64,000 nucleotides of DNA from Podarcis filfolensis. Lineage: Eukaryota. Shown one piece after another: positions 10,446 through 52,871 of this stretch. A program made the position numbers and the translations under genes. The notes under the pieces were generated by a model, which was not told the DNA's origin, searched no databases, and saw nothing but the letters and a program-made list of their open reading frames with translations. How positions within the stretch are numbered: position 1 is the stretch's first letter; the number at the start of each line of letters is the position of its first letter. The stretch lies in NCBI GenBank assembly GCA_964270895.1, contig OZ185436.1. One strand, written 5' to 3'.

Positions 10446-12568
10446 ATACTCACCCATCCACCCACCCCAGACTATGCAGGGAGTTAGAAGCCAGGACGGA
10501 TGTGCTCATTCTACCAACCATTAAAGCATCTTCCTTTCAATCCCTTCCCTTTTTCTTAGTCTGTAATACAGCCTTCCCCCAACCTGGTAACCTCCATATG
10601 TTTTTTTGGACTCCAACTCCCATAATCCCCAGCCAGCATGGTCAATGGACAGAGATGATGGGGATTGTCGTCCAACATCAACTGGAGGACACCAGATGGG
10701 GTAAAGCTGGACTACCCTATAAAGCAATCTGACCTAGCTTCTATAAGCTTCCATACACTTATCTACCCACCTACCCTTTGTCTAGATTACTGTACCAGTT
10801 CCAGGCAGCCAGCCAAGCTGGTTCCACAGTGGTGATGTAGGGTAGCCAGGCCTCACTGATGCTCACAATTAGTGCCAAGCTTATTGAGTTACCCTAGTTC
10901 TTTCCAACCTTCTCTCTCTCTCTCTCTGCTGAGCTGCTAATGACCTTTTTGTTCTTGCTGGTGTAGGAGCATTCAAGCTTCTGAGCTGCACAGGATCCTT
11001 CATGGGAATGGAAAGGTCCAGTGCATTCTGGAGGAGGTGGAATAGCCAAAGTGCAAGAGATGTCATGTGAAAAGCTAGGGTTGCCCACTCTCATTCTGAA
11101 GAAAAAAGCAACTGTGGAGTCCTGATCTGGAATGTGCTCTCTGATCCAGATTGGGGCCTCCTGACACTTTTCTGCTGAAAATGAGTCAAGAGGGCTTGGT
11201 TTTCTGTGCATGTGCATGCACACACACATACACACAGAGGGACCTTATCCTGATTGGAATAATATCCTGGATCAGGGCCCCAAGGCTGCTTTTTCTCCAA
11301 GCTAACAGTATATTCACATTAGCAGCTTAAAATGCAGAAAGGTAACCTTCTGCTAAATTTCCCAGCTGCATTTACACAGTTCTGCTCACCTCCAAAAGGG
11401 GATGGAGATGTCTTAACCCAGCACACATGGCCTTGTTGGTTTCCCTGCCCCTGCAACTCCCCAGGAAACTCCAATTCGTGAAATTCAACTGCACATTTGT
11501 GATGGCTGTTAGGGTATATTCTCATTACTGCTTACCATTTTCTACTTGGATTAAAGTTTGTTTGAGGAAAACGTATCAAACGGCAGTGTTTGTGAAGCAA
11601 CTACAGGATCAATATGGATTGTGGCTATCGTCATGTGAAAACAGCTTCGGGAAACTAGGGGCAGGAGTCAGTGGTAATGTGAACATACCCTCAAAGTGGC
11701 CAGTTTAAGCTTGTTTAAACACATGACATTCCTGTGAGGCTTGGTTCTTAAATACTGGCTTGGTGTGCAGCAATTAAGTATGGAGATTTGTCATCTACTA
11801 ATTGCTGCGGACTGAGCCACTGAGAAAGGCTGGCTGAGAACTTTTGACACCCTTATACAAATCTTACCTGTCTGCAGGTGCATTCTACCCCCCCCCCCCC
11901 GGTACTCTTCTTGGTTATAAAAAGGAAGATTGGTATACAGATTTTCAAATTGTTACATAATTGGCATGGATCAATCAATTCCTCTGTTTCATGGGGGGGG
12001 GGTTCAGCCGGAACTCACTGGAACTCATTTCCAGCCCCCCTCAGGTGGGCACCACTGCATTATAAGAGAACAAAGGAGGCGTTCATGGTGAGTTCTGGCA
12101 CCTCTTGTTCTAGAAAAATAGCACTGGTTTCATGAATGAAGCCCTAAGTTTAATCAGGGAGCGTAGGAGCTGCTTGTGTTTCTCAGGCTAGAGTTGACCC
12201 TAAACTGAGGTGTTGGAAGAGTTGCCTGCAGCTGGCTTGCCTTGAATTACCTGTGGTGATGGGGAGATAAGAGCAGTTGCTGGACATTTTCTCCTCACTC
12301 GAGTCAAACAACGAACAAAGGGAAGGGTCCAACTCTACAGTGGATTATCAAAGCAGACGGGGGGGGGGGGGCGGAATAAGGACATTGTTGGAGTGGAACA
12401 GAGATGAAAGCATGCTGTGCATAGGAACACACTGGGGAGAGGGGAGCTAGGACTAGGTGGGAGTCCATTTTGTGTAATCTAACTGGCATGCTTCAAGGCG
12501 GCAGTGAAGCTAGGCAATCCAAACTGATTTAGTAATCCTTTCCCTTCCTCTTTTTTCAGATAGTCAAA

Positions 12569-12734
12569 ATGAGCAGCGGTGGTGGCACTGTCTGGATAAT
12601 GGGTATAGCTTGGGCACTGGTCGTGTCATGGACCAGTGCTACAGGCATGGAGGTTCGCTGCTTGCCTGGAGGAAAACACAAAGCCAGCCCAAGCCCAGAA
12701 GGACAGCTTGGCATTTGCCAGATCTATGCAGAAA
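12569..12734 (+). CDS. RTBDN: RTBDN coding exon 1 (signal peptide to QIYAE)
   Basis: Acceptor ttttttcag at 12559, ATG at 12569, donor AAA|GTGAGT. Confidence 0.88.
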
Positions 12735-14407
12735 GTGAGTATTGGTTAAGGGCACGAAGGCAGCAGGAGGGAGAAGCTACAAGGCTTGAAGAGCTTTGGG
12801 CAAGCAGGAAGTGGAGCTCTGAAGCCAAGGTTCCTCTCAGCATTTCCCCACAGGTTTGAGGAGAGATGAGCAAACCTCCTTATGGTGGTTGATGAAATAA
12901 ATGAGATGATCAGATGCAAAGTAGACCTGTACCTTTAACAAGAATTGGCATAGAAGAGTTGTCTAGAAGCTGGTAATACTTATCTCTGCCCTATATTCTG
13001 GGCACTAACCTGTAGGCCTCCAGATGTTATTGGACTCCAGCTCCCATCAGCCTCTGCCAGTATGGCCAATGGTCAGGGAAGGTGGGAGATGAAGTCCAGC
13101 AGCATCTAGAGGGCCTGGGCTTCCCCACACCTGACACAGTGTCATCACTTCCTCTAATAGTGAATGAGCGGTCTAGTTAGCCTTGCCCCTTGCCCTATAC
13201 GAATAGCTGCATCTAAACATGTAATGGGAAAGTTTGACCCATTGATTCAGTGGCATTTTATTCCACATGGGATTGTTTTATTTTTCTTTTAAAAAACACA
13301 CAATCTCAGACAAGGGAAATTGAGTTAACCTTTATATTGTCCTATAAAGGGTGGTCTTGCTTTAATTTAGTATAGGAATTTACCAGCTTGATATTTTGTC
13401 TTGTACTAATAAGGTCATATTTTGCATAATACAGTGCTGTCAATCAATCACAAAAATACACGAAGAAAGCTGAAATAGCAGCCCCCAGCTAACTATGTTC
13501 AAGGAAATCAATGTTGTATGATTATTTTACTATATAACAAAAATGTCTATGCAAACACATTTGATATGGACCATCAATTTTTTACCTCAAAAATCTTGGG
13601 AATACTGCTACCAGGCAGAACTTACACATGACTCTGCTGAACAAAAGAGCCATATGATGGCCCTTCAACTTCATGTTCCTCAAATCTTTCACTTCAGAGT
13701 CCAGGACCTGGACTTTCTCTTGGTTCAGGACCGTATCTCAGGAGGGCAATGCTCCAGACAAACAGATCAAAAGATTCACTTTTTTAAAGTTAACAGATCT
13801 TTCTTCTACATTTTCAGCCTCGGTTGTTTTTCAAGAAAAGAGGAAGGCTAGTGAGAATAATATGTACTGTATTTCATTTTGAGGCTGCAATGATCTCATA
13901 GCCCTGGCTGATCAAAATTTAATGTGTGTGAGTAGCATGCACTGCTATGCACAGGGTGCAAAGGAACTCAGCAGAGGCAACCCCTGGTGCCTGGGGGAAA
14001 CTTTGGAGGGTTGTACACAGAGGCCACAGAGACTGTAGGGAGCGGGTGGGGAATGGGACATGGGTATAGGAGTATAGGGTTCTTATCATGCCCAGAATAC
14101 CTGCTAGGGAATTTATGTATGCATTGGCTCATCACATGGTAACTGGTGGCAATTTGCATACTTCCAGCTTGTTAGGCAATACCTGCAGCTGTTGCAATCA
14201 GACGGCAACATGCAGGGTTGCCGGAATAACAACTGGTTCATCTCAACACAAAGGAAGGGGCTGCTGACAGAAGGATTCTTTTCCCACAGATGCCTGTTGC
14301 TCACCGGAGGTCACCCAGGACCTTTCCAAAGCCAATGACATCTACTGGAACCGCTGTGGGAGCCTTAGCAGCAGGTCAGACAGAGAGGCAGCCATGCCTA
14401 CTCCAGT

Positions 14408-14452
<45 letters not shown>

Positions 14453-17400
14453 CCTTTCCTACAAGCTGGGCCTACCAAGAGGTAGGAGTTCCTGCTAAAA
14501 CTAGTCTTGGAAGTTACCAGACAACTGGGATGGGGAAGATCTGCTCCTTGGCACGACCTTTCTTCACATTTTTTTATTGTTCCCCCCCCCACCATGGGTA
14601 GCCTTTTGCTTGCCATTTTAGGCCTGCTCCGCCATCTTTATGCCCTAGTGCTTCTTTCTCCTATGCAGATGTGAGGGCTATCTACAGCAGCTGGAATGTT
14701 TTTACCGTTGCTCCCCCATCGCTGCCCAGTGGCCTCATCCTCAGCGCCCCACAGCTGTGCTGGCTGTGCCCCTCTGCCAGAGTTTCTGTGACCAATGGTG
14801 AGTGAAGTCTCCTTGTCCCAACTGGGGAAGGAGGGGACCCTGTAGGAGATGAAGAAACAGGGAAAGAGCATCGTCTCCTGGAGATAGCAGAAGAGGAGAA
14901 AGTCATCACATTGCTAGTGTCCTGTTTAAATGAAATGCCCTGCCATTTTAAGACAGACAAGCAGTGAAAGGCATACCAGGTTGTTGTTGTTTTACACTTA
15001 AAGGCCCTTTATAAGTCATTTCCCCGCAGAGATTCAACATGCTTGGGGACACTGTATCTATGACACCTGCATCTCGCTTTCGGCACACCCAGCTCAATTT
15101 TGGAATAAGTCAGCTGGATGTGGGGAAGCTGAGTCAAGTGCAGGAGCTAACCTGGATATTGAGGGAAATCCACAAGCTTTTTAAAGGGCATCTCCACCCA
15201 ACACAAACATACTTCCATTTCTTGGGCCTCAGGCAGTGGACTGGTGGAAATAAATGTATGTAATTCTATTGGCAAAAAACGTTGAATTGGGTAAAGGTGG
15301 GGGAAAGGAGGAAGTGCTTAGTGAGTATTGACCCTCCATTGGGACTGAAAAAGATAGAGAAACTTGGGTTCATATCTCCATAAAACTTAGTCATGAAACT
15401 AACAGAGTGACTTTGAGCTGGGGATTGTTATTCAGCCTAATATACCTCACAGGGTTGTCTGTCGTAAGGATCAAAATGGTGTGTGGACCTTGTGCACCAA
15501 CTTGAGCTCCTTGGAGGTCTGATATAACAAAAATAAAAGGTCTGGTCTGATATAATAAAAATGGTCTGATATAATAACAATTAAAGTTCAACTGCTTTCC
15601 TTATTGCCACACCTTCTTATCACCTCAGGTATGATGCTTGCAAGGAAGACCTGACGTGTGCTCGCAACTGGCTCACTGACTGGCATTGGGGCCCTGAGGG
15701 AAATAACTGCAGCCAGGACTGCCTGTCGTATGGCCAGGTGAGGACACTAAAAGCCCCCAGATGGATGCAGCCCTCAGCCCCAGAAATCACATGAGTCATG
15801 AAGAGATGCCTGTACTGAGTCATGTTTGGGAAAAGCAGTTATTGGAGGAGAAAGAGGAATTACACCATTCCTAGGAGGCCTCAGCTTTAGCACAAACCAA
15901 GCCAAGTCTTTCAGTATTCCTGAAATCACATAAATTATGTGAAAGGGCTTTGTCAACAACTTAAGGTCTTTATTTCAACTTGTGATGCCTTTTTAGAATA
16001 AGGTTCCCACTCTTCAAGGGGGAAAAGCTTAAAAGTGAATGTGCCTCCAACTTTAGGTGGAAGTTGTTGGGGTTTGTATTCTTCTCTTAAAACAAATAGA
16101 CCTAGCTTATGTGACTACTCACTCATGGTTCATCTTTTCAAGGACCACTGTTCCACAGAGGGATGGTAATCTGAGTTGATGTTAGGCTGGGACATTTTCA
16201 GAACTATTGTAGGAGCCATGAGTATAAATGCTGACATAATATGCTCTTTGGCATTTTTTAAAACTGTTGTGCCACCAGCATTCTCTGTCAGAAACTGCAA
16301 GTCAAAGACAAAGAAAATGCCTGAAGAGATCGGTGCTTTTAATATTTCTTTGTAGCTGCCTCTGTATTGCCAGTTACACAATGAGGAATTGTTTCCCACA
16401 AGCTTAGCTGAATAGGCAAGGGGTTTCCTCCCATCTCTTAAAACCAGGTGACAGACATCAAGAGAGCACAGTGCTTCCCAAATACCCAACTTTATCTCTC
16501 ATCATGAGGACTAAAAGCCTAATTGTTGGAGGAGGGAATTGTTTGTACTCTTAATGTTAGCAAGAGGCCAGAGACTTCAAACGTCTTAAGGTCAATCCGA
16601 TAGTAAATGCTCCAACATCTCCAAGGTTTAACAAAACAGAAACATCTCCAAGGTTTTCCTTGGATGTACAGGGCACCCAAGGGGCGATCTTGGTCAATGA
16701 AGCCTCTTCTGTGTCTTGCTTTAAAAAACCACACACACATACAAAATCCCAGCTGCAGTTCAAAAGGCAGGTGCTACATTACCCTGAAGGTCGGCAGAAA
16801 TTGAAACCCCTCATATTATCTAACTCTATATGACATGTTTCAGCCTTTCCACTGGAGGTGAAGCTAATTCCTGCTGACTGCTGGTCGGCTTGCACTGAGA
16901 CAGTCATTTGAACCTTCGGGCAGCTAGCAGAGTTTGTGTCCAGTGACAGGCAGGCAGGCAGGCAGAGAGCAACAGCTTGGCAGGATGCCTGTCAGAAGAA
17001 ATGGGCAGTATATGACTGACAGTGTAATAACGTCAGCACCATACAGCTCGTCCCTTCTTCCCCTGCAGTGTTTGCCCAACAAAGATGACAGACAGGATTG
17101 CTAGTAATGTGTGGTGGCTGCTGCCCTTTTGAATTGGTGGAGTTGTCATTTGAGACCCACTCTCTCCCCAAACTGAGTTTTTTTTACTGTATTTTAGAAA
17201 GCAAAATAGTGCATCTAATTGTTATGTACTGAGTTGCATAGGATCCAAAATGCAGCAGTCTGATTGGTCCTAGAAAAATAGGATTCAGAATGCAGCAGTC
17301 TGATTGGTCCTAGAACAATAGGATCCAGAATGCAGCAGTCTGATTGGTCGGCAGGAGCCACCCAATCCAACTCCGGGTTGGAAGTGAATCCGCAACCTGA

Positions 17401-19522
17401 TTGGCCTACAGGAGAATCCCAGAATTAGCCAATCACATGGGACCCATTGTGTAAATAATGTATATAAAGCAGACATTTTGGGGGAACTTCCATTCCTCAC
17501 TACTCTGAGCTGAATAAAGAGCATGAAATCCACACTCGACTCAGAGTATATTTCACTAATCATGCGCAGAACACAATGGTATCCCCACAGAAAAATATCA
17601 ACCATTATCTCAAAGCATCAAAGGATAGGGGGAATGGTGTGCAAGGCCCTGAGCATGATATCCTGACAAAGTTCTTGTTTAGAAATCAAGCCACATCAAA
17701 TGGCATAAGCAAGCAGCAGGCCCAGTTAGTCTGCCTTTCTGCCATGTGGTAGCTATTGTGTTGGTCTTTTGGGAGAGGCAGGAGCTAACAAGCAGCTGGG
17801 ATTCTATGAAGCAAGCCCCTCTCACCCCATGCGGGAGGGACTGTGCTGGTGACACAGCTCAAGTCATCAAGATACTCACTCTGCTGCAGGCCCCCCAAAA
17901 TGTTGTCTGTCTTCGGCTTCCTCCAGCCCCAGCCAGCATGGCCAATGGTCAGGGTTCATGGGCGCTGGAAGTTCCAACAACAGTCTCTCACCCACTTTGG
18001 GTATCTTGAGTCTGCTGAGTGACAGATTAGTTTGGAAAACTAAAGCAAAACAAGGTAATGCATTTGTCTTTCATATTGTGCTGCTCCTTCTTCTCTTCCC
18101 ACCCATCCCCTTGCTCAGTGGCGGACTTACATTTGGGGGGGGCACTGTCGCCCCCCTCCTTTACAGCCAGCAATGAGGTCTGAGTAACCAGTATTCTGTT
18201 TTTCAATGGGGTTGTTCCACAACAGATCACCACACCTTTATAATGTCTTTGTGGGATGGTTGAAATATAGGCAACAAAAAACTAATCAATTCGAGTCACG
18301 TGACTCAAATTGGGTCTACTAGACCCAAAATGTTTAAGCAATGTGGACTGAAGTTGCTTCTGGGGTCCCTCTGGGATGAAGGGCCCTTAAGCTTCATTGG
18401 TTTCCTAGTAGATCTGCCCCTGCCCTCACCCCAGATTGGTTTGTTTGGATGGTACTCTACCCTTCTGCTCATAAAGACACAGCCACCCCTGCTGAAAGTC
18501 TCTTGACATCCCTCTGCCTCGGCCCAGTATACCTGAAGGAGCGTCTCCATCCCCATCGTCCGGCCCAGAAACTGAGGTCCAGCTCCAAGGGCTTTATGGC
18601 GGTTCCCTCACTGCGAGAAGTGAAGCTACAGCGAACCAGACAGAGGGCCTTCTCGGTAGTGGCGCCCGCCCTGTGAAACACCCTCCCTTCAGATGTCAAG
18701 GAAATACAGTGGTACCTCAGGTTACAAATGCTTTGGGTTACAAACTCCGCTAACCTGGAAGTAGTTACCTCGGGTTGCGAACTTTGCCCCAGGATGAGAA
18801 CAGAAATTGCGTGCCAGCGGCATGGCGGCAGCAGGAGGCCCCATTAGCGAAAGTGCACCTCAGGTTAAGAATGGTTTCGGGTTAAGAATGGACCTCTGGA
18901 ATGAATTAAGTTCATAACCTGAGGTACCACTGTACAGTAAACAACTATCTGACTTTTAGAAGACATCTGAAGGCAGCCCTGTTTAGGGAAGTTTTTAATG
19001 TTTGATGTTGTTGCTTTTTTATTATTGTTATTGGTGTTCTGTTGGGAGCTGCCCAGAGTGGCTGGGGAAACCCAGCCAGATGGGCAGGGTATAAATAATA
19101 AATTATTACTATGATGATGATGATGATGGAGTATTGTTCAAGCCTTAACTTCTGCACTGAGGCTTCTCAGAGCAAGAGCGCTTCACATTCTCAGCTCCCC
19201 ACCTCTCTCTCCCCCTCAGATGTACAAGGACGGCAAAGAGCTCTGTGAAACCATCTGGGATGATTCCTTCGTAGCCAGCACTGATCCTTGCGAGTGCCTG
19301 ACGCTGACGGCCTCCGACTCAGCCCTCTCTGCCTCTTATTTGCGTCTTGAAGACAGTGACAGCATCGAGGAGCCAGACACCACCAAGGAAGGCATTGAAA
19401 GAGGCCGCGCCAGCCCTGGAGGGCCCTGCCCAGGCAACCCCCTGCTCCGTCGCCTGCGGAGAAACATGCAGAAGCGCTCGGTCTTCATGGAAGATGTGGA
19501 GGGTAGTGGGAGCGGGTTCTGA
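12569..19522 (+). CDS. RTBDN: Retbindin (riboflavin-binding protein / folate-receptor family), join(12569..12734,14290..14374,14669..14797,15629..15737,19220..19522), 263 aa
   Basis: Five GT-AG exons (166+85+129+109+303=792 nt) join in frame. The protein has a signal peptide and the motifs CLPGGKHKASPSPE, ACC, YWNRCG, ECFYRCSP, VPLCQSFCDQWYDACK, NWLTDW and CETIWDDSF. The GSGSG tail resembles human RTBDN, and the gene sits tail-to-tail with RNASEH2A. Confidence 0.88.
14290..14374 (+). CDS. RTBDN: RTBDN coding exon 2 (NACC...YWNRCG)
   Basis: Acceptor ttcccacag|, donor CAG|GTCAGA, phases compatible with neighbours. Confidence 0.88.
14412..14449. repeat. (TG)19 microsatellite in an RTBDN intron
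   Basis: Read directly. Confidence 0.95.
14669..14797 (+). CDS. RTBDN: RTBDN coding exon 3 (CEGY...ECFYRC...CQSFCDQW)
   Basis: Acceptor ctcctatgcag|, donor ATG|GTGAGT. Confidence 0.9.
15629..15737 (+). CDS. RTBDN: RTBDN coding exon 4 (YDACKEDLTCARNWLTDW...)
   Basis: Acceptor cacctcag|, donor CAG|GTGAGG. Confidence 0.9.
17220..17555 (+). mobile_element. Solo LTR
   Basis: TG...CA ends, 5-bp TSD CTAAT (17215-17219 and 17556-17560), 40-bp tandem repeat x2.7 (17241-17349) carrying CCAAT boxes, TATATAAA, and AATAAA at 17513-17518. Confidence 0.88.
18512..19128 (+). mobile_element. L2 LINE 3' fragment interrupted by a Tc1 MITE
   Basis: Encodes ...YLKERLHPH...RAFSVVAPAL (L2 ORF2 C-terminus) and ends in an AT-rich trinucleotide tail. 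Confidence 0.85.
18707..18932. mobile_element. Tc1/mariner MITE
   Basis: TIR CAGTGGTACCTC...GAGGTACCACTG, TA TSD. Confidence 0.9.
19220..19522 (+). CDS. RTBDN: RTBDN last coding exon (MYKDG...GSGSGF*)
   Basis: Acceptor ctctctccccctcag|, TGA at 19520-19522, candidate AATAAA at 20087-20092. Confidence 0.88.
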   Translation: MYKDGKELCETIWDDSFVASTDPCECLTLTASDSALSASYLRLEDSDSIEEPDTTKEGIERGRASPGGPCPGNPLLRRLRRNMQKRSVFMEDVEGSGSGF

Positions 19523-21235
19523 TTGGAGACAGCCAGCCTCCCAGGGGAAAATAACCCCCTCCCCTGTGATTTTCTGAGGCTTGGGGGGGATCGCTTGTGA
19601 TCTATGCAAATCCTTCATGTCCCGTGTCACCAGCTTCTTGCCATCCTGTATAGCTCTGTGCAACCTGGGTGTGGCCGTGGCAGAGGAAGCAGGTGTGGCA
19701 ATTTAGCCGAGCACTCTGATTCCCCATGCCCTAGAAGCAGAGTTTACCCCACCAGAGCACCACCTTCTACTCCCGGTATGCCTGCCTGTGGCCGCTGCTT
19801 CCCCTACACATGTCTTGTACATCGAATCATAGAATTGTAGTGTTGGAAGGGACCACGAGGGTCATCTAGTCCAACCCCCTGCAATGCAGGAATCATTTTG
19901 CCCAGTGTGGTCAATGGTAGTTTCTTCACTCTCAACACCCTGCCTTCCCTCCCAATGACTAAAACACCCATTCCCACACACCCCCAGTGGTCCTCAAATC
20001 TGTCTCCTCTAGCACTATGGGGGAGGGAGCGATGTCTGTCTTTCAAAGGCTCTGGCCTGAAAGAGTGAGAGGTTGCATAGACTAAGAATAAATAAGTTAA
20101 TGAGATCATTCTGCACTTACTATTAACCCCAGCTACTAATAATAAGGCTTTAGGTATGTTTGCCTGTAGAACTGAGCCAAAATGAAATAGCCTTCGCTGT
20201 TTGCGCTTGACACAGGCAGCAGAAAAAACCACTACCTAGGAAGTAGGATCTGAGAGTTAAAAGGCCGGTTACAGTTCTGTAGCAAGGAAACTGCAGATCT
20301 TTGTAAACCAGTAGCTGCTGCTGCAGTATTAAAATGGCCAGTGCTTCATAGTTAGCTTAAATTTGTATACAACCAAACACAGAAGGGGAAGGAGAAAGAG
20401 ATTGTGCCACTGATGTGGCTAGATTTAGATTGGTTATCATTGTAATAATTCAATGTGTGTATCATGGAAAAGTTTAAAACATCCATTTTAAAAAATATAC
20501 AGAGCCTCCAGTCTGAACTGGTCAGTGCCATGTACTAGTTTGTCCTAGGCAGAAAAGTAGTTTGTGAACCAAAAAAAGAAAACAGCATCTCATCTTGAGT
20601 GGGTGAGTGGACAGAATAGTAAGATCCCTGGAGTTAGAATCATAGAATTCAGTGCAGGAATCCAGCCCTCAGCCGTCCCTGGGGGGGCTGAAACCACCAA
20701 CCTTCTGGTTAAAAGCCGGTTCTTACCTGTGTCCTCCATATCTTATGCAGCACTCCTTGAATTTCACCACATCAATCCCTGTATTACCATGTGCAAACTT
20801 CCTTTATAATATTGTCCACCTTCTGTCCAAAGCAGATCTTGTGTCACAAACATGCACTGCTTTATCAGCTGCCTTGTCATGCTCTTGCTTGTTCACCCTT
20901 GTCCATGTTTGTTGCAAACTGCACACTATGTATTGGTTCAAACCTATTACTTGTGGAGAAATTAAACAACAACAACGACTTGCGTGGGTCGGCATTTGTG
21001 GAAAGAATCTGGGGGGGGGGGCCAGAGTAGGTATCTCTGCAAAGAACAGTCCCTTTCTTAGCTTTCGACACGTCAGGCTGAATGGCAAAATGAACTTGGA
21101 CGAAAAGGGAGAGAGCCCACTTAGACAGAAATTTTCTGTTAGTGGCTCAAGCTGCCTGATTTACTTGTTTGGTTTGTGTTTAGAGTATTATGTATATGGT
21201 GTTATGGGTGTTAGTTGCCAAATCGCAAGACAATA

Positions 21236-24200: not shown

Positions 24201-27200
24201 CTGTAGAGAGGAAGGTAAAAGATAAGGGGAAATGAGGGATCTGGGTACAGCATTGTTCCTCCGCTGGCAAGCTATGCTCGACTTCTACTTCTCCTTGAGA
24301 GTTGCGCCCACTTATCTTGGATTCAGACTTCTTCTACCTGCTACAACCACTGACCTTCACTGCCTTCCAAGAGCCGAGATAGAAAACAGGTGCCCTGGCA
24401 GGCAGCCCTTCTTCCCTCAACAGAGACAGTACCGGATTCCTGCCCCATCTATCCAGGGGAAAGTTAACTGGCTGCCTCTCAAGCTCCTCCTGCGGCATTT
24501 GCCATAACTGCCAAGGTCAGCCTGAGATGGGAGGCAGCGGAGAATCAGCCAACTCCCTAGACTCAAGCGGAGGAGCTGCTCCCTGGATTGAGCTGGGTTC
24601 CAGAAAGCTGTGGATATCAGGGAAGGCAGCCACAAGCATCTTTGGGCATCAGCAATTCAGCAACTCTGTGCAGTACTCTGCACGGCCCACATAAGCACAG
24701 AGCAAGGCACAGGGGAGTTAGCAGAGCAAGCCAGCCACAAAAGGGGGGACCCTCCTTACAGCTGATAAATGAATTTAAGGGAAAGGGTCCCATAAACACT
24801 CAGCAGGCCCATTCAGCTCCAACGATTGCCCTCCCCAGTGCCACTATTTAAAAAGCATCCTGGACTGCCAATCCACTATCTTCCTATATAATATTTGTGT
24901 AGGGAAGTCATCATGCTGCATCGCATGTGCAAAACCATCAGAAGGAATCTCTCACATGCCTTTATCAGCAGCAGCTTTTTCCTCCTATGCTCCACAGTTC
25001 CCTCAATATCCCTTCTGAAGGTGCATCTACCGGTCCCGGATCCATCCAACAGTTCTTCCGTCCCCACTTACCAGCAAACGGGCACAGCTTTGCTCTCCAA
25101 GATGACCTGAGCTGTACTCCAGCTGAACCGTACAAACTGTGGGTAGCCAAAGACAGGGTCCAGATTTTGGGTGAGCCACTCTTTAGTCTTGGGATCTGGG
25201 CCGGGGAAGGGGTAGAGAGATTAGAGGATAGATGGCCAAGTATCCTGGCATATTAGTGCTCAGTATTATCTCTACTTCTAAGACTGAGCCGTAGCCTGGA
25301 GAATAGTGGATGGGAAACATGACACAATAGGGGTTTGCAAATCTCCTAAGTACGGTACTGTCTCCACCAACTCTGCTGCTTTCTCGGTGTGTAGTATCTT
25401 AGAGGTCATTTTACACATATACACACACAGACACTCCCCTTTCATTTCAACTTAATGCAAGGACATGGCATTCTGTCCTAGAGGTCAACCCGAGCACAAA
25501 AGCCAATAAGGTCCTACTCACCCTAAGAGAGGGGAGATGGGAGGTATAGACTCTATACTATACTATAGAGGATCTAGGACAGCTAATGGCATCTAGTGAG
25601 GGCTGGGAAAAGCCCACATTGTTGCCAAGTAAACTAAATGTGTAATTCAAAGATGAGAGTGGGGAAGAACATTCACAAATAATAAATGTGGTTCTTAGTC
25701 ACTGCCAAAGTAATGACTTGGCTTATTCATCTGAATGAAGCACTGCACTCTTTGTGTGCCTCCACAGAAACGCAAGAGCCAAAGGTCCATCTTGCCTACC
25801 CTTTTGTTTCCCACATTAAGGCAACAGCCCTCTTCCAGTGTTATCCTCAGCAGCTGACATATTGCCTTACAACATGGAGTTTGCCTATTTCCATCCTATA
25901 TGCTAATAGTTAAGACGTTATCAAGGTGCGACACCTTATTCAGAAAAACAGCACCGTACATGGGCAAGAAAGAATGGAAGAAGGCGGCTTGGGGGCACTC
26001 CCAAGTACAAACAATATCGGGGGGGGGGGGAGAAACCTAACTGGGGGTGAGGGGAACCAGAAACAGATCCGTGAGAACTGAAAATGATCAATGGACACAA
26101 AATGCCGACTGTTGTGGGAGGAGGGGGACAGAAAACCAGGGAGGAAAAAGGGCGAATGGGAAAAAGGGCAAAGAGCCTGGCAGGCTGGCACCCTTGACAT
26201 TTTGTTGCAGGTCCCTCTGATTTTGACTACCCTCTCATCCATGTGTTCATTTTCTTTTAAATCCACCTAAGCTAGAAGAAGAAGAAGAAGAGTTTGGATT
26301 TGATAAACCGCTTTATCACTACCCGAAAGAGTCTCAAAGCGGCTAACATTCTCAGCCACCACATCTTGTGGTGGAAATTCATGTGGCTGGTTCTGTGCCC
26401 AAGCTGAGGAGAAATACTGGGATTACCATTAGGATAGCCAGAGCCATAATCCAAGTCCGCATCTTCCAGATCCTCCAAGAACCTCCAGTTCTTTACCACC
26501 CGGTCCCTTGCCACCTATGGAAAATGAGAGATAACCAACAATGGAATTGCCTTCCTGCATCATTCCCATCTATGTCCTGATCCATCTAGCCTAGTGGTCT
26601 CGAATAGTAGCCAGCCCCTGTCCTAATGAATGATGGCAATAGTCACCCCCTATTGTTTGGCCCCAGCATCCAGTATTCTGCTCCAGCACATGAAAGCTTA
26701 TTTAGCTGTTTCACGGTGGAAGCGGTTAGAGCTTCACAGTTTAATCGTACATCTCTCCAGATACCAGAGAGCACAGTGAGCCAGGAAACAAAGAGATCCT
26801 ATGTCTCGCATTCACCTTGGCACAGATGCTGGCTGCACTGACAACAGGGAAGAGGGAGTCTGCTTTGGGTTTCACTGTAACCTCCAGGTCTGGGAAGTGC
26901 TGCTTGAGTTTTTCTTGGTACTTCTCTGCTGGTCCCACAGTATCCACAAAGACCTGAAGGAGGGAGGAACCATAAAGCACTGAAGAGGTGGGATTTCTTG
27001 CCACTTGCTACAGGTATGGGATGCTGAGCTGGCTCACCTTTGCAACCTGCACTCCAGAGTCCAACGCCCTCTGGATTAACCCAATGGCCGTATCATGCGA
27101 AAGCGCATTCAGGTTGTACTTAGCTCTGCAACAGAAAGGAAGCTATGTTTTTCACTCACAAAAAAACCTTGGCTCTGAGGCCCAAATGTCAGAAAAGGGC

Positions 27201-29723
27201 TGGTTGGAAAAGGTGTTGTGGAGACTGCACCCTGGACCAGCTTATGCCACCACCAGCCAGAACAGAAAGGTGTCTCCGCCAGTACATTACCAATAGAACA
27301 GCTGCCCTGTCCACACAGCAAATAGGAGCTCAAATCTCACATAGTGTTAAGAGTGCAGTGGGCTGTTTGTGCCACAGCCAGTTAACACAGCAAACAACAT
27401 CACAGCAGTAAGCATCATTCTCAAGGATGAGCTGGCATGAAGGATGAAAACAGCTCAGGGGGAGAGACACGGCCTCCCTTCTCTGAAAGAGGTCTGTCTA
27501 ACTTTTCTGATAAACTCCAAGGTGAGAGGCCTCGTGTTCCAATTCCCTTCCCCTTGCTCTGTCCTCTTTAGCCTGCAGCCACTACACAACACATCCAGTG
27601 TCAGCAGCACTTTTTCATTTGCCAGGTCGAAGTGATTTTATTGAAAACTGTGATTTTTTTCTGCCATGTCAGTCTCTGTTATGATTTTATCATTGCAGTT
27701 GTGTTTGGCTATTGTGGCTTTAATGATAGTTAGCCACCTTTGGAAACACGTATGCATTAGAAAGGCAGGGTATTAATCTTTCTAACAAGTACACGAATAA
27801 ACAAAACACAACGATTCCAGGCAGAGAAGCGATCTTGGGAGAAAAACCGCCACCCACTCAAAGCTGTGGTTCTAGCGCAGGGGTGGAGAACCTGCGGCCT
27901 TCCAGGCGTGGCTAAACTACAACTCCCACCACCCCTGACCACTCTTGCTGGGACTGATGGGAGCTGGAGCCCAGCAACATCTCGGGGTGGGGGGGGGGAA
28001 GAGGTTCCCCAACCCTGTTGCAGCGACTTCATCTAATATTGTCTGCTTACCGTCTCTGCATGCTGGTGGAGATGTAATTGGGTGAGAGGATGTGCAGGGC
28101 CCACCCAACAAAATCCTTCGCTGCACCCAGTTTCTCAAAGAGCTGTTCCCGCTGGGCCTCCGTCAGAGTCTTGGAATCTGTGAAGGGAAAGCAAGCAGGG
28201 AGAGGAGGACACAAACTCAAAAAAGATGTGACCTAGGATGAATACAAGCTGGGCAGTGCTTTGACAGCGGTTAGGGGAAACACTCCAAGAGGTACAGCAT
28301 TGCCCCCTTTAGTCCAGATCCCATTTCCTGCCACGCCAGCATTACATCACAGTCCCAGTCAAGCACACCTTTCTTTCCTTTTTACCTGCTACCTTCAGTG
28401 CCTCTAGGTCTCCCTGCCGATCCACAGGACAGTAACAGATTCCATAAACCATGGGACCTGGGAAGAAAGCAGAAGCCAATGCAAGCTACTCTTTCAAGAC
28501 TCAGAGCTCCACCTACAGATACAATACTGCAGGTGTTTTTATAACAACATTGTCATGTGAGAAATGCTCTGAACTAGCAACACTAAGTATAGTTATAATT
28601 ACCGTATTTTTTGCACCATAACACCCACTTTTTTCCTCCTAGAAAGTAAGGGGAAATGTCTGTGCGTGTTATGGAGGGAATGCCTACGGGTGGCATGCCT
28701 ACGGATTTTCCTCCTCTAAAAACTACGTGCGTGTTATGGTCGGGTGCGTGTTATAGAGCGAAAAATACGGTACAGCCCCAGGACAAAACTGGTCCTGCAA
28801 TCAGGAATCCTCCACAAAAGACTCCCCTCCAGCCACCATCACAGGACATTATTCTATTTTAAGGGTGGGGAAGTTCTGCTCGGCAGCAGGGGTGGGGTAG
28901 GGGAAGTAAAAAGCAGTCGTGGGACTGAACAAACTTATTGGCACAGAACTGGAACAACGTTATTTGCAAATCAGGACTGGATTAATTGTCAATTCTACAA
29001 GAGAGTCATTGTGGTGTAGTGTCCGACTAGGGCCTGGAAGACCAAGGTTGAAATGCCCACTCAGTCACTCTCTTGCAGCCTATTCTACCTCACAGGGTTG
29101 TTGTGAGGATAAATTGGGAAGAGGGTCATGTACGCCACTTTGAGCTCCTTGGAGAAAAGGTGGCATACAAATGAAATACTACTACTACAAAAATGCTCTA
29201 TATCCTCACAATTTATCCTCATAATCACCCCTCCTGGCGTTATTAAAGTAGGTTGGCCGATAGCAATAGGAATCCTCTAGCGTCTAGGCCACCTGGCAAG
29301 TCCACGGATCACCCCCAAGGCAGGCGAATATTAAGGATCAGCATGTGATTTGGGACTCCCCTTCTGATGCTTTCAGGCAGTGCTTTTTTCTGGGGGGACG
29401 CATACCCCTAAACATTTTGTGAATCTAAGTTTGACCTCATTGAGGGACAGTATTTCAATATGAGCAAGAAAATGAGAGTACCCCTAAACATTTTTTTAAA
29501 GAAAAAAAGCACTGCTTTTAGAACTCGATTCCTCGCTGGAGCAAAAAGTACCCCAAGGATTCCTCGCTCCCGCCGGTTTCACCCTCAGGCACGTACCCAG
29601 CACCGGACCCCGGCCTGCTTCATCGATGCCCAGGCTGCAAGGTTCGCTCCGGCAAGCGGCGGGCACCGCGGAGTCCAGCAAACAATTCACGGCGTTGTCC
29701 CGCTCGAAAGCGCTCAGGTCCAT
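24062..29723 (-). CDS. RNASEH2A: Ribonuclease H2 subunit A, complement join(29597..29723,28386..28457,28051..28177,27038..27125,26816..26953,26427..26514,25072..25195,24062..24200), 300 aa
   Basis: Eight GT-AG exons (903 nt) in frame. Motifs present: [91 protein letters not shown] on the - strand at 23827-23832. Confidence 0.97.
25072..25195 (-). CDS. RNASEH2A: RNASEH2A exon 7
   Basis: DPKTKEWL...FVRFSWSTA, 124 nt. Confidence 0.95.
26275..26354 (-). mobile_element. SINE 3' tail (family of 38748-38995) in RNASEH2A intron 6
   Basis: Reverse complement of gagaatgttagccgctttgagact...caaactcttcttcttc. Confidence 0.7.
26427..26514 (-). CDS. RNASEH2A: RNASEH2A exon 6
   Basis: VARD...YGSGYPN, 88 nt. 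Confidence 0.96.
26816..26953 (-). CDS. RNASEH2A: RNASEH2A exon 5
   Basis: VFVDTVG...SAASICAK, 138 nt. Confidence 0.96.
27038..27125 (-). CDS. RNASEH2A: RNASEH2A exon 4
   Basis: [17 protein letters not shown], 88 nt. Confidence 0.95.
27878..28017. mobile_element. Short palindromic hAT-type MITE (related copies near 9000, 10600, 13010, 17900, 37800, 38250, 42550, 46200, 49720)
   Basis: CAGGGGTGG...CCAACCCTG ends, 6/8 TSD, internal actacaactccc/gggagctggagcc quasi-palindrome. Confidence 0.7.
28051..28177 (-). CDS. RNASEH2A: RNASEH2A exon 3
   Basis: [11 protein letters not shown]...SPNYISTSM, 127 nt. Confidence 0.95.
28386..28457 (-). CDS. RNASEH2A: RNASEH2A exon 2
   Basis: [10 protein letters not shown]...KVA, 72 nt, AG/GT flanks. 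Confidence 0.95.
28602..28770. mobile_element. pogo/Tigger-like MITE in RNASEH2A intron 1
   Basis: TIR CCGTATTTTT...AAAAATACGG, TA TSD. Confidence 0.85.
29011..29188 (+). mobile_element. Older tRNA-derived SINE with L2-type tail
   Basis: gtggtgtagtg A box, ctacctcacagggttgttgtgagg core, (CTA)n end. Confidence 0.6.
29378..29514. mobile_element. hAT-type MITE in RNASEH2A intron 1
   Basis: TIR CAGTGCTTTTTT...AAAAAAAGCACTG, 6/8 TSD (CTTTCAGG/CTTTTAGA). Confidence 0.75.
29597..29723 (-). CDS. RNASEH2A: RNASEH2A exon 1 (MDLSAFE...[10 protein letters not shown])
   Basis: ATG at 29723, donor G|GTACGT, 127 nt. Confidence 0.96.
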
Positions 29724-36509: not shown

Positions 36510-39500
36510 GTAAGAGAGAGTACCACTTTCAGTTGTTTTAAACAACATTTTCAGTCAGTCTTAATGTCGTAAGGTGCCTTGAGCTCATGAATATGCAGGA
36601 CATAAATACCCTAATTAAAGAGTTTCCCAGACCCACCATGATAAGAGAGACTGGGTATGGATCACTTAAGAACTATTTTCCTGCTATGCAGCATTGGAGC
36701 ACATAAGCGCCAAGAAAGAGGATCTTGCATTATCCGTCTGTTTATCAAGAGGTAATCAGTCCCCAGGCACTGAATCAGATTGCTGTGGGGATCATGGTGT
36801 GTAGTGCAAATACTATATTTTGTTAGCAGGTGCAGATAATGGACCTTGGGTTTGCCATATCCCAAAGGAAGGATGAATGTTATTGTGGTCAAGGCATGAC
36901 ATTTGTTTTGAGTACATTGTGCTGGTGCCTTCAGGTGTTGTCTCCTTCCATAAACTTCAGATAGTAGCCAGGCAAGGTTTCTGGCTCAAAGTATTCTGCT
37001 GATGATGAGCTTTCCCCCTCTCTACACAGGCAAATATGTGGTTCTCTTCTTCTACCCCCTGGATTTCACCTTCGTCTGTCCCACAGAGATCATAGCTTTC
37101 AGTGATCGAGTTGAGGAGTTCCGCAAGATCAACTGTGAGGTTATTGCTGCCTCGGTTGACTCTCAGTTCACCCATTTGGCCTGGTGAGTCTCCTGGTGTT
37201 CAAGATCTAGCGCAATGTTTCCATCCATGCTAGAAAGCAAATACTGTGAAGACTTATGGTTATGTTGTTGTTTCTTAAGGCTGGCTTAGCTGAAGGAAAC
37301 TGAGTGACAGGAATAACAGCACATCCCTATTTTGTGTGTTGCTTAGTAAGAGGGTTAGAATTGAAACATCATTAAGAATGTTCTAGGGATCTGACACTGG
37401 GAGGGAGCCAAGCAGAAGTTAACTGACAGAAGGGTGTAGAAGGTCCCCATCAGCCTTATCTAGCCAAACCTAGCTGCTGTTAGTTTTATCAGCCACCTCA
37501 GTAGACTAACTGCAGTTGTGTTCAGAGTTGATTTGAGCTCCTAAATGGGTGTAAAGAACATTTCACTCTTCTGTGGGTCAGAGAATCCGACTTGTATCTA
37601 ATTGGAGAATATTTCCAGTTTGTCTTCAGAATTAGGTTTCTGATGAGAAAGAAGATACTTGCCCAGTTTTTAGACCCAGCTTTGGTCTGGGAGCCCCATG
37701 TCAAGTTTGGAACAAAAAGTTAGGGGCAATCTATTCCATGTGAAATATTTGGTTCAACCGTTTCTAAATAGTAAATGGCTAGAGTAGTAGCTTGCAGATG
37801 TTCAAGATATGTGGGAGATATGAGGCCCTCCAGCTGTTGGACTCCCAACTCCCATCAGCCCTTGCCCAATATAGCCAGTGATTAGGGTTGAGGTGGACAT
37901 CGGTTCACAGGTTCTCTACCTCTGCTCTAAATGATATTGCAGATGTTAACGGCCATTTCCCTGCAGGATCAATACAGCAAGAAAGGAAGGGGGCTTGGGA
38001 TCTGCAAATATTCCACTTGTGGCAGACATCAACCACAATATTTGCAAGGACTATGGAGTGCTCAAGGAGGAGGATGGCATTGCATACAGGTATGGAGATC
38101 TTGAGGTCTAACCTTAATTCTAGATGACAGTTCAAAGGGCTGTGGCTGGTGGCATCTTGGCAAATGCCAGTCCTCTTGCGTTCACTAGCAAAGCCTCAGC
38201 ATGGCTGACTCAAGTACCACTTAGCTCCTCTCTCCAGTGCTGTAACACAGGGGTAGCTAACCTGGGGGTCTCCAGGTGTTCTTGAACTAGAGCTGCCAGC
38301 TGCAGCCAGCATGGCCAGTGGTCAGGAATGATGGAAGCTGCAAAATTTGGCAGCATCTGGAGAACAATAGATTAGTCCCTCCTGCTCTTAAGTACTGTGA
38401 TCTGTTGAAGAGGTTAGTCATCTTTGATGCTGCTGGACTGTTCAATCCTCTATTCATCAGCTTGGTCCCACCCATCAAGTCCATGTACGTAATCCAAATG
38501 GTAATAGCCTGGCTGGAATATAAAAAGCTATTAACACTAGCTAGGTCCTAGAACCCTGGTCCTTGGATGTATGGACTTGGACTTCAGAGAATTAGCTGTA
38601 GCTGGAACTTAATTGAGTCTGTCTCTGCTTTTGCCCCAACCTCTTTTAGTTGATCTCTCTTAACTTGGAGAAAGGTATCTGCATAGGCATAGATTCAGAA
38701 TTCCCCCACTCTTAACTTTGACCCTGGTACTGCTGATGAAGGCAGTAAGCCAGTGTGGTGTAGTGGTTAAGAGCGGTAGTCTTGTAATCTGGGGAACCGG
38801 GTTCGCGTCTCCGCTCCTCCACATGCAGCTGCTAGGTGACCTTGGGCTAGTCACACTTCTCTGAAGTCTCTCAGCCGCACTCACCTCACAGAGTGTTTGT
38901 TGTGGGGGAGGAAGGGAAAGGAGAATGTTAGCCGCTTTGAGACTCCTTAAAAGGGAGTGAAAGGCGGGATATCAAATACAAACTCTTCTTCTTCTAAAAG
39001 TGCCACGTAGATTCCAGAAGGTTCCAATACAGGGTAGAATTCCCCTTGTCTGCTCTTGTCCTGTCTCTCTACTAAGGCTGCATACACACCATACCTTTTA
39101 AAGAACCTTCTCCAAAGAACCCAGGCAATTGTAGCTTGCCCCTCACTGAACTACAGTTTCTTGTACCATTAAACTATAGTTCCCAGGATTCTTGGGCGGG
39201 AAGACATGTGCTTTAAATGCATCTTAGGCTGTGTACACACCATACAAGCTTGAATCTCTCTCTCTCTCACCCTCACCCACACCCACACATATATGCATGC
39301 TCTTAATTGCCCTTCTTTCTCCCCCCTCCCCACAACTATCCAGAGGCCTGTTCATAATTGATGACAAAGGCATCCTGCGTCAGATCACAGTGAATGACTT
39401 GCCTGTGGGGCGTTCTGTGGATGAGACACTTCGCCTGGTACAGGCTTTCCAGTTCACAGACCAGCATGGTGAAGGTAAGGGGTGGGGATTGGGATAATAG

Positions 39501-51905: not shown

Positions 51906-52871
51906 TCAGAAGGACTGTTGCATCTTGGCCGTCAAGAGGAGCTGGCAGCCGTTGTTCACGTGGTTCATGACTTTCTGCTTGAGTTGCGCTACCTGGTCCC
52001 GCAGCGCGCTGGCCGTGTTGGACAGTCCCGCGTTCTCGCTCTTCAAGGTCTTCACCTTGTCCTCCAGCCTAGCGATGCGCTCCAGCTTCCTCTTCCTGCA
52101 CTTGGTGGCGGCCAGGCGGTTGCGCAGCCGCTTCCGCTCCACCTTGATGCGCTCCTGATCTTCCATGTTGATGGGCGACACGGGCGGGCTCTGCATATCC
52201 GGCACCGTCTGGGGCTCCTCTTTGAAGCCTCGCGAAGGGTGCGGCAAGGCCAGGCCGTGCGGCTGCGGCATGTAGCTGAGGTTGGCGCTGGGGTAGCTGG
52301 ACGTGGTGCTCAGCGTGGCCGAGGGGTTGTAGCTGGTCAGGTTGGTGTAGACGGGAGGCGGCTCCTGCGGGAGGGAGGCCCCGTAGCCGCTGCTGGCCGA
52401 CGAGGCCGCCGCCGCTGCTGCCGCCGCCGCCGCCACCGCTCCGATGGAGACATTGGGCGGCGGCATGTGGTTCATCTTGTGCAGGTCGTCCAGCGCCTTG
52501 ACGAAGCCGTCGGCGAAGCCTTCTTGCTCCTCGGTGGCCCCGCGCGGGTAGTAGTACTGGCCCGGCGGCGTCGGGGTGGTGGTGATCACCCCGTTGCTGT
52601 TCTGGACGATCAGGCGCTCCAACTCCGGGGCGGCTAGTTTGAGCGACGAGCTCCCGGTGTCGGCCTGTTGCTGCGGCGGCAGCGAGCCCGGGAAGTACCC
52701 GGCGGGGCCGTCCTCTGGGGCGCGGAGGTGGTGCGGCAGCTGGGACTTCAGGCCGCGGAAGGGCTCCGCGGACAGGTTCAGAGCCATGCCCGACTTCAGC
52801 GTCTTGTAGTCCTGCCCGTAGCCGGAGAGAAAGGAGTCAGGGTAGAAAGGCTGCTCCATCTTCGTGCACAT
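51906..52871 (-). CDS. JUNB: Transcription factor JunB (AP-1 bZIP), 321 aa, single coding exon
   Basis: [10 protein letters not shown] start, [36 protein letters not shown], basic region [21 protein letters not shown] and a leucine zipper. A 10-Ala tract lies at 52404-52433. Confidence 0.98.

What the first reader, a model, noticed from the sequence alone, without database searches (positions are those of the whole stretch)
12569..19522. Lizard retbindin keeps a complete riboflavin-binding-protein architecture (18 Cys plus both flavin-stacking aromatics)
Seen: the spliced protein has 18 mature-chain cysteines. They align one-to-one with the nine-disulfide pattern of chicken riboflavin-binding protein, including the C167-C202-type extra pair (here DPCEC ... 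GGPCP) that 16-Cys folate receptors lack. It retains ECFYRC (Tyr75 equivalent, codon 14703-14705) and CETIW (Trp156 equivalent, 19256-19258). Established: these two residues sandwich riboflavin in RBP. From memory, human RTBDN has lost the CFYRC motif, the Trp and several Cys. Inference: non-mammalian retbindin may be a high-affinity RBP-like flavin carrier, and the mammalian protein a degenerated form with a different binding mode.
Basis: partly seen in the sequence, partly recalled or inferred. Interest (0 to 1): 0.7.

Follow-up and report, generated by a model that had tools for sequence, protein, structure and literature searches.

The report
Wall-lizard retbindin with intact flavin pocket
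This is the wall-lizard copy of retbindin, a secreted vitamin-B2 carrier gene; like every non-mammalian copy examined it keeps the full binding architecture of the egg riboflavin-binding protein, and the marsupial copies have lost part of it.

Summary
Five GT..AG exons (12569-19522, + strand) encode a 263-aa secreted protein of the folate-receptor fold. It has 18 cysteines, the CFYRC tyrosine (14703-14705) and the CETIW tryptophan (19256-19258).

The gene is already annotated by NCBI as "retbindin" in Podarcis, Lacerta and Zootoca, with the same exon borders.

It is a true RTBDN orthologue and not the egg-yolk RBP.
- It lies next to RNASEH2A, a peroxiredoxin exon and a Jun-family gene.
- It carries the RTBDN-only C-terminal tail ending EDVEGSGSGF.
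- In a maximum-likelihood tree rooted on folate receptors it sits inside the RTBDN clade; forcing it to join the RBP clade is rejected (p-AU 0.0003).

RBP and RTBDN are old paralogues that coexist in alligator, an anguid lizard and lungfish.

The "complete architecture" is not special to lizards. Nearly all of 93 non-mammalian RTBDN and RBP proteins keep it. Marsupial RTBDN has lost three cysteines, the tyrosine and the tryptophan, on a very long branch.

Eutherian RTBDN could not be fetched. High-affinity flavin binding remains an untested inference, and no expression data could be obtained.

This is a solid, modestly new comparative point on a known gene. The scan had already noted the same stretch and its C-terminus (s1-318052).

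The parts
12569..12734 (+). Coding exon 1: start codon, signal peptide and N-terminal segment with Cys31 and Cys50. A strong acceptor just upstream (cttttttcag at 12550-12559) suggests a non-coding exon further 5'.
   Evidence: exact match to residues 1-55 of P0008
14290..14374 (+). Coding exon 2: NACCSPE with the Cys58-Cys59 doublet, YWNRCG with Cys78.
14669..14797 (+). Coding exon 3: five Cys (85, 94, 98, 120, 124) and the ECFYRCSP motif.
   Evidence: (Pfam E 1.7e-12)
14703..14705 (+). TAC codon for Tyr96 of the precursor, the equivalent of chicken RBP Tyr75.
15629..15737 (+). Coding exon 4: four Cys (131, 137, 154, 158) and NWLTDW. It carries the RTBDN-specific N-C-S sequon, with Asn153 at 15705-15707.
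19220..19522 (+). Coding exon 5: Cys172, the CETIW tryptophan, Cys187 and Cys189 (DPCEC), the acidic Ser linker EDSDSIEE, Cys233, a basic cluster, the acidic Ser-Gly tail and the stop codon.
19256..19258 (+). TGG codon for Trp176, the equivalent of chicken RBP Trp156.
19448..19519 (+). C-terminal module: basic cluster RRLRRNMQKR followed by SVFMEDVEGSGSGF, the hallmark of the RTBDN clade.
   Evidence: (D255, E257, G258-G262 invariant)
26744..29723 (-). Neighbour: RNASEH2A exons, tail to tail with the gene.
39231..39494 (+). Neighbour: typical 2-Cys peroxiredoxin exon. PRDX2 is expected from the position; the exon alone cannot tell PRDX1, 2 or 4 apart.
51906..52871 (-). Neighbour: single-exon Jun-family bZIP gene. 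JUNB is expected from the position.

Best explanation
The locus is the Podarcis orthologue of RTBDN (retbindin), a secreted single-domain protein of the folate-receptor fold. Shown here: it keeps the ancestral ligand-pocket scaffold that it shares with its paralogue, the egg riboflavin-binding protein. That scaffold comprises 18 cysteines in the RBP pattern, the Tyr and Trp that sandwich the isoalloxazine ring in chicken RBP, and a hydrophobic residue where folate receptors have their pterin-binding Asp. Inferred: the mature protein binds riboflavin by aromatic stacking between Tyr96 and Trp176, as RBP does, and serves as an extracellular flavin carrier or reservoir. Its RTBDN-specific C-terminal module (a basic cluster followed by an acidic Ser-Gly tail) probably governs processing or attachment to the matrix or cell surface and plays no part in ligand binding. 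Shown for marsupials: the therian lineage remodelled the pocket and lost Cys58, Cys59, Cys94, Tyr96 and Trp176. Mammalian retbindin must therefore bind flavin differently or more weakly.
For: Gene model and residues. Pfam Folate_rec is colinear over the exons. Chicken RBP 6hce scores 195 bits (E 1.6e-56) against 72-90 bits for FOLR1, FOLR2 and JUNO. An AlphaFold model (pLDDT 81.5, domain blocks mostly 85-98) matches 6hce best (E 1.7e-21, TMt 0.81), ahead of JUNO and FOLR. All 18 Cys and Trp176 are invariant and Tyr96 is kept in at least 90% of 17 RTBDNs from teleosts to lizards. The same holds in nearly all of 93 RTBDN/RBP proteins. At the position of FOLR1 Asp81, FOLR has D in 3/3, RBP has I/L/V in 11/11 and non-mammalian RTBDN has V/L/I in 67/67. 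Orthology: RBP clade 97/97, RTBDN clade 91/96, with the window proxy inside squamate RTBDN. The AU test rejects squamate RTBDN plus RBP as one clade, p 0.0003. RNASEH2A, peroxiredoxin and Jun-family neighbours are present. Marsupial losses; stem branch 1.97 changes per site. Mouse RTBDN is reported to bind riboflavin and to maintain retinal flavin (PMC9298789, PMC13592420).
Against: No binding or expression data exist for any non-mammalian RTBDN in the literature I searched. The Tyr and Trp are family-wide features: folate receptors keep both and JUNO keeps the Trp, and JUNO is known from established knowledge to have no vitamin ligand. Their retention therefore does not prove flavin binding. 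Some basal teleost RTBDNs have His, Gln or Thr in place of the Tyr. The roles of Tyr75 and Trp156 and the disulfide map of chicken RBP come from established literature (Monaco 1997; Hamazume 1987) that I could not open. The eutherian state was not verified with a tool-derived sequence.
Confidence: 0.65

Rival explanations
1. The gene is the squamate egg-yolk riboflavin-binding protein (the orthologue of chicken RBP), mislabelled retbindin by automatic annotation.
For: It shares 18 Cys, CFYRCSP and NWLTDW with chicken RBP, and 6hce is its best PDB match. Chicken RBP itself carries the gene symbol RTBDN in databases (PMC6811977).
Against: Tree and AU test. An anguid lizard, alligator and lungfish each have both a 'retbindin' and a separate RBP-like protein, encoded on contigs of different length. 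The window protein has the RTBDN tail and lacks the poly-Ser phosphorylation block and the NFT/NGT sequons of RBPs. The locus lies beside RNASEH2A, as mammalian RTBDN does (gene order from memory; co-location within 5.5 Mb in horse in PMC9526059).
Confidence: 0.03
2. The protein has an intact fold, but its physiological ligand is not riboflavin. It could bind folate or another planar heterocycle, or act as a protein-binding module as JUNO does. On this view the conserved Tyr and Trp reflect the family scaffold.
For: Folate receptors keep the same Tyr and Trp, and JUNO keeps the Trp. No ligand has been measured for any non-mammalian RTBDN. A recent paper cites a proposal that RTBDN acts in 11-cis-retinal handling (PMC13592420).
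Against: The folate-specific Asp is replaced by V/L/I exactly as in RBP. The protein is much closer to RBP (195 bits) than to FOLR or JUNO. Even the degenerate mouse orthologue is reported to bind riboflavin (PMC9298789).
Confidence: 0.15
3. In squamates, RTBDN and not the RBP paralogue is the main plasma or yolk riboflavin carrier, made in liver under oestrogen control.
For: Actinopterygians and sharks yielded only the RTBDN type in these searches, yet they provision eggs. Only one squamate RBP-like protein (Elgaria) was recovered. The linker EDSDSIEE has S-x-E motifs reminiscent of the RBP phosphoserine block.
Against: Elgaria has both genes. Absence of a lacertid RBP-like hit is not evidence, because the searches were word-limited and capped. 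There are no expression data.
Confidence: 0.12

Closest known systems
Mammalian retbindin (RTBDN), the rod-secreted riboflavin-binding protein of the interphotoreceptor matrix
   Same: It is the orthologue: same clade in the tree, same neighbourhood beside RNASEH2A, the same basic-cluster plus Ser-Gly C-terminus (a GSGSGSGSGSGP-type tail in marsupials), and the same retained late Cys pair.
   Different: The lizard protein keeps Cys58, Cys59, Cys94, Tyr96, Trp176 and the N153 sequon, all of which marsupial RTBDN has lost. Lizard and marsupial RTBDN are only 37-39% identical, no closer than lizard RTBDN is to the RBP paralogues at 38-41%. Human RTBDN is cited as 27% identical to chicken RBP over 135 residues (PMC9298789).
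Chicken egg riboflavin-binding protein (RBP/RCP; PDB 6hce)
   Same: Same fold (TMt 0.81), the 18-Cys pattern including the extra late pair, CFYRCSP, NWLTDW, the Trp in C-x-x-x-W, and a hydrophobic residue at the FOLR Asp81 position.
   Different: It is a paralogue, not the orthologue. RBP has a run of Ser in an acidic block and NFT/NGT sequons, and lacks the KRS...EGSGSGF tail. RTBDN has a five-residue shorter loop before YWNRCG and its own N-C-S/T sequon.
Folate receptors alpha and beta, and JUNO (Pfam PF03024)
   Same: Same fold and 16 of the Cys. Both the Tyr and Trp equivalents are present in folate receptors.
   Different: They score only 72-90 bits. They have Asp where RTBDN and RBP have V/L/I, and E instead of R in C-x-Y-x-C. 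The named FOLR1 examples end in a hydrophobic C-terminus of the GPI-signal type instead of a secreted acidic tail, and they lack the extra Cys pair.

Membership tests
Folate receptor family (Pfam PF03024) | Sequence match to the family profile along the whole domain | tested here: met
   The exons match colinearly at profile positions 29-58, 61-102, 104-141 and 142-171. E3 scores 48 bits and E4 30.9 bits against a cut-off of 29.8.
Folate receptor family (Pfam PF03024) | Folate-receptor fold | tested here: met
   AlphaFold model of the proxy P0008, pLDDT 81.5. Foldseek finds 6hce at E 1.7e-21 and JUNO/FOLR at about 1e-13, with TMt 0.69-0.81.
RBP/RTBDN subfamily (flavin-type members) | Eighteen Cys, including the extra pair equivalent to chicken C167 and C202 | tested here: met
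   That they form nine disulfides is inferred from the chicken protein and not shown here.
RBP/RTBDN subfamily (flavin-type members) | The stacking Tyr in CFYRC and the stacking Trp in C-x-x-x-W | tested here: met
   Codons 14703-14705 and 19256-19258.
RBP/RTBDN subfamily (flavin-type members) | A hydrophobic residue in place of the folate-receptor pterin-binding Asp | tested here: met
   Leu92 in the proxy. RBP has I/L/V in 11/11, RTBDN has V/L/I in 67/67 and FOLR has D in 3/3. The role of Asp81 in FOLR1 is from established knowledge.
RBP/RTBDN subfamily (flavin-type members) | Binds riboflavin with fluorescence quenching | not testable with these tools
   This needs recombinant protein.
RTBDN orthogroup | Placement in the RTBDN clade, apart from the RBP clade | tested here: met
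   The ML tree gives RTBDN 91/96 and RBP 97/97. The AU test rejects the alternative at p 0.0003.
RTBDN orthogroup | Conserved neighbourhood (RNASEH2A, PRDX2, JUNB) | tested here: met
   RNase H2A exons, a peroxiredoxin exon and a Jun-family gene lie in the window. The mammalian gene order is from memory; co-location within 5.5 Mb in horse is given in PMC9526059.
RTBDN orthogroup | C-terminal K/R-R-S ... E-G-S-G-S-G-F tail | tested here: met
   Residues 248-263; invariant in A1 and present from lamprey to lizard.
RTBDN orthogroup | Retina or photoreceptor-enriched expression | not tested
Egg-yolk RBP orthogroup | Poly-Ser phosphorylation block, NFT/NGT sequons and an RBP-type C-terminus | tested here: not met
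   The window protein has only EDSDSIEE, none of these sequons, and the RTBDN tail.
Egg-yolk RBP orthogroup | Placement in the RBP clade | tested here: not met

The most novel reading that the evidence does not exclude
Retbindin began as a fully competent, RBP-like high-affinity flavin carrier and remains one in all non-mammalian vertebrates. On the therian stem the pocket was dismantled, with both stacking aromatics and three N-terminal disulfide partners lost, while the Ser-Gly tail was expanded. On this reading mammalian retbindin holds flavin by a different and probably weaker mode, and the conserved acidic Ser-Gly tail, a glycosaminoglycan-attachment-like motif, tethers the protein in the matrix. 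A lizard or fish protein would then be the better structural model for flavin binding by this gene family.
Probability: 0.35. Interest if true: 0.6.

Novelty: new member of a known kind. Interest (0 to 1): 0.4.

Why it matters
Work on retbindin is mouse-centred. It justifies flavin binding by homology to chicken RBP.

The comparison here makes three points.
- RBP and RTBDN are distinct, ancient paralogues, even though chicken RBP carries the symbol RTBDN in databases.
- Nearly every non-mammalian RTBDN examined keeps the RBP pocket scaffold.
- At least marsupial RTBDN lacks both stacking aromatics.

This makes one question directly testable: how does mammalian retbindin bind riboflavin, if at all in the RBP manner? 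It also points to non-mammalian orthologues as tractable models, and to the invariant C-terminal tail as the clade's real hallmark.

Tried and rejected
- **My starting belief was wrong.** I assumed that chicken RBP and mammalian RTBDN are orthologues, which would have made the finding trivial. One search showed both genes in Elgaria and alligator, and the tree confirmed two clades.
- **The exon 5 word search reached only fragments.** It returned exon-5 ORFs from other squamates. A longer fragment used with the region option reached annotated full-length proteins.
- **No mammal was found by word search**.
- **The profile search of 1.84 billion representatives found marsupials only.** No eutherian RTBDN was among its best 150.
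- **The first AlphaFold run was unusable.** It used 17 sequences and gave pLDDT 53. It was repeated with 121 sequences.
- I therefore have no RNA evidence and no direct synteny for the RBP paralogue.
- **Papers not held.** Monaco 1997 and Kelley 2015 could not be opened.
- **Paper searches that found nothing relevant.** These were the searches for the Tyr75/Trp156 residue names, for the 6hce entry, and for non-mammalian rtbdn.
- **The joined window protein was never submitted.** Exons were searched by reference, and P0008 served as a by-reference proxy.
Full report
**1. What is in the sequence**

Reading 12300-19800 and translating each exon by reference gives five coding exons on the + strand.

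| Exon | Coordinates |
|---|---|
| E1 | 12569-12734 |
| E2 | 14290-14374 |
| E3 | 14669-14797 |
| E4 | 15629-15737 |
| E5 | 19220-19522 (stop included) |

- All four introns are GT..AG, and the three split codons read N, R and W.
- The coding length is 792 nt, or 263 aa.
- Cysteines per exon are 2, 3, 5, 4 and 4, giving 18 in all. None lies in the signal peptide.
- The extra cysteine pair is at 19289-19291 and 19427-19429.
- Pfam Folate_rec matches the exons colinearly.

A note on method: the joined protein of the window was never handed to a search tool. Exons were searched one by one by reference. For whole-protein work I used P0008, NCBI's "retbindin" of Podarcis raffonei, as a by-reference proxy.
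- P0008 is 96-100% identical to each window exon and has the same exon borders.
- E5 is exact in the P. muralis protein, and E1 in P. raffonei and P. lilfordi.
- The window therefore comes from a Podarcis wall lizard, and the gene model is already annotated as retbindin in Podarcis, Lacerta and Zootoca.

**2. RTBDN or RBP?**

I began by believing that chicken RBP is simply the RTBDN orthologue; a data paper does list chicken GeneID 396449 as "Retbindin (Riboflavin-binding protein) RTBDN" (PMC6811977). The searches contradicted this.
- Elgaria has both a "retbindin" (82% identical to the proxy) and a "riboflavin-binding protein-like" protein (47%), on contigs of different size.
- Alligator likewise has both.
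- Lungfish also has both. Coelacanth has an RBP-like protein plus a partial protein named retbindin with the RTBDN-type tail.

An IQ-TREE analysis of 37 proteins, rooted on three folate receptors, gave these results.
- The RBP clade (birds, alligator, Elgaria, a caecilian, lungfish, coelacanth) has support 97/97.
- The RTBDN clade of 24 rows has support 91/96.
- The proxy for the window sits inside squamate RTBDN (95/84).
- Holding squamate "retbindin" together with the RBP clade costs 47.6 log-likelihood units and is rejected (p-AU 0.0003).

Two independent marks agree with the tree.
- **The tail.** Every RTBDN-clade protein, from lamprey and shark to lizard, ends in a basic K/R-R-S followed by an acidic tail ending EGSGSG plus one hydrophobic residue. 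This tail is invariant in alignment A1 and is seen in nearly all rows. RBP-clade proteins lack it. They have a poly-Ser acidic block instead.
- **The neighbours.** The window holds RNase H2 subunit A exons on the - strand at about 26.7-29.7 kb, a typical 2-Cys peroxiredoxin exon at about 39.3 kb, and a single-exon Jun-family gene at 51.9-52.9 kb. From memory, this is the order JUNB-PRDX2-RNASEH2A-RTBDN on human 19p13.13. A horse study lists these genes within one 5.5-Mb region (PMC9526059).

**3. How general is the "complete architecture"?**

- In 17 RTBDNs from teleosts to lizards, all 18 Cys and Trp176 are invariant, and Tyr96 is kept in at least 90%.
- In 93 near-full-length RTBDN and RBP proteins the same columns are filled almost everywhere.
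- The exceptions are obvious gene-model gaps, a few Tyr to His, Gln or Thr changes in basal teleosts, and single Cys losses in two snakes.
- The feature is therefore ancestral, not a lizard speciality.
- It is also partly family-wide, because named folate receptors keep both the Tyr and the Trp.

A more telling position is the one that holds the pterin-binding Asp in folate receptors (its role is from established knowledge of FOLR1).

| Group | Residue at that position |
|---|---|
| Named folate receptors | D in 3/3 |
| RBP clade | I/L/V in 11/11 |
| Non-mammalian RTBDN | V/L/I in 67/67 |

RTBDN therefore shares the RBP-type pocket and not the folate type.
- Chicken RBP (PDB 6hce) scores 195 bits against the proxy, whereas FOLR1, FOLR2 and JUNO score 72-90 bits.
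- An AlphaFold model built on 121 sequences (pLDDT 81.5) matches 6hce best, with E 1.7e-21 and TMt 0.81.
- RTBDN also has its own conserved N-C-S/T sequon at Asn153, present in 64/67 and absent from RBP, FOLR and marsupial RTBDN.

**4. Mammals**

The word searches found no mammal. The profile search of 1.84 billion representatives returned marsupial retbindins, named.

In Petaurus, Dromiciops and Notamacropus the changes are as follows.
- The NACCS segment is deleted, so Cys58 and Cys59 are lost.
- ECFYRC reads SYFLHC or a close variant, so Cys94 is lost and Tyr96 becomes Leu or Phe.
- C-x-x-x-W reads CGSAL, so Trp176 becomes Leu.
- The late Cys pair and a lengthened Ser-Gly tail are kept.

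Their stem branch is 1.97 changes per site, against 0.12 for squamates. They are no closer to lizard RTBDN (37-39% identity) than the RBP paralogues are (38-41%).

No eutherian RTBDN was among the best 150 hits. Its state rests on my memory and on the cited figure of 27% identity over 135 residues between human RTBDN and chicken RBP (PMC9298789).

By the chicken disulfide map (from memory), the three lost Cys are partners of Cys31, Cys50 and Cys98. If so, the whole N-terminal lid and the Tyr-bearing helix were remodelled together.

**5. Mechanism**

- Shown: an intact, strongly conserved scaffold of RBP type in a secreted protein.
- Inferred: riboflavin is bound by stacking between Tyr96 and Trp176, as in chicken RBP (Monaco 1997, cited in PMC7072493; I could not open the paper).
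- Inferred: the C-terminal module is for processing or anchoring.
- The linker EDSDSIEE offers S-x-E motifs, a faint echo of the RBP phosphoserine block.
- The tail, an acidic stretch followed by SGSG, resembles a glycosaminoglycan-attachment site. Both this and the previous point are leads only.

**6. What could not be done**

- Eutherian sequences were not obtained.

**7. Verdict**

The orthology claim is right and is now tested.

The interesting content is comparative. Non-mammalian retbindin keeps the full RBP-type pocket, whereas therian retbindin (marsupials at least) does not. I found no statement of this in the papers searched, although it is visible to anyone who aligns the public proteins.

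Interest is moderate, at 0.4. I file the gene as a new member of a known kind.

Noticed in passing
related proteins: Chicken RBP is catalogued under the gene symbol RTBDN (GeneID 396449, PMC6811977), yet bird RBPs group with alligator RBP in a clade separate from true RTBDN. Alligator, Elgaria and lungfish have both genes. No bird protein with the RTBDN tail turned up. Either birds lost RTBDN or it sits in poorly assembled microchromosome sequence.
   Followed up: partly
window 19448-19519: The C-terminal module, a basic cluster followed by the tail ending EDVEGSGSGF, is invariant from lamprey to lizard and becomes a longer Ser-Gly run in marsupials. The acidic stretch plus SGSG looks like a glycosaminoglycan-attachment site.
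   Followed up: partly
window 15705-15713: An N-C-S sequon (Asn153) is conserved in 64 of 67 non-mammalian RTBDNs. It is absent from RBP, folate receptors and marsupial RTBDN.
   Followed up: partly
window 17238-17349 and on to about 17520 (intron 4): There are 2.8 tandem copies of a 40-bp unit containing GATTGG (an inverted CCAAT box). They are followed by a TATAAA at about 17465 and an AATAAA at 17513. The layout resembles a solo LTR or another promoter-bearing repeat. I only observed it.
   Followed up: no
window 14412-14450 (intron 2): A perfect (TG)19.5 microsatellite lies 38 bp downstream of exon 2.
   Followed up: no
window 12550-12568: A strong polypyrimidine tract and AG acceptor lie immediately before the start codon, which suggests an upstream non-coding exon. 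A G+C-rich stretch at about 4000-6000 could hold a shared promoter with the expected head-to-head neighbour MAST1 (expected from memory).
   Followed up: no
related proteins P0021, P0022, P0088, P0094, P0020: RTBDN has diverged faster in some lineages. Snakes deleted four residues of NWLTDW, and Liasis lost Cys158. Frogs have CMYLCSP and lack the WxW loop (stem 0.96). Alligator RTBDN lacks the whole acidic linker (branch 0.92).
   Followed up: no
related proteins P0109, P0110: The best-scoring representatives are multi-domain proteins with 7 and 4 matched Folate_rec stretches (1671 and 1105 aa). Some of their domains carry CFYRCSP. P0109 is from amphioxus (Branchiostoma floridae).
   Followed up: no
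window 20087-20092: This is the first + strand AATAAA after the stop codon. It is a candidate polyadenylation signal and would give a 3' UTR of about 570 nt.
   Followed up: no
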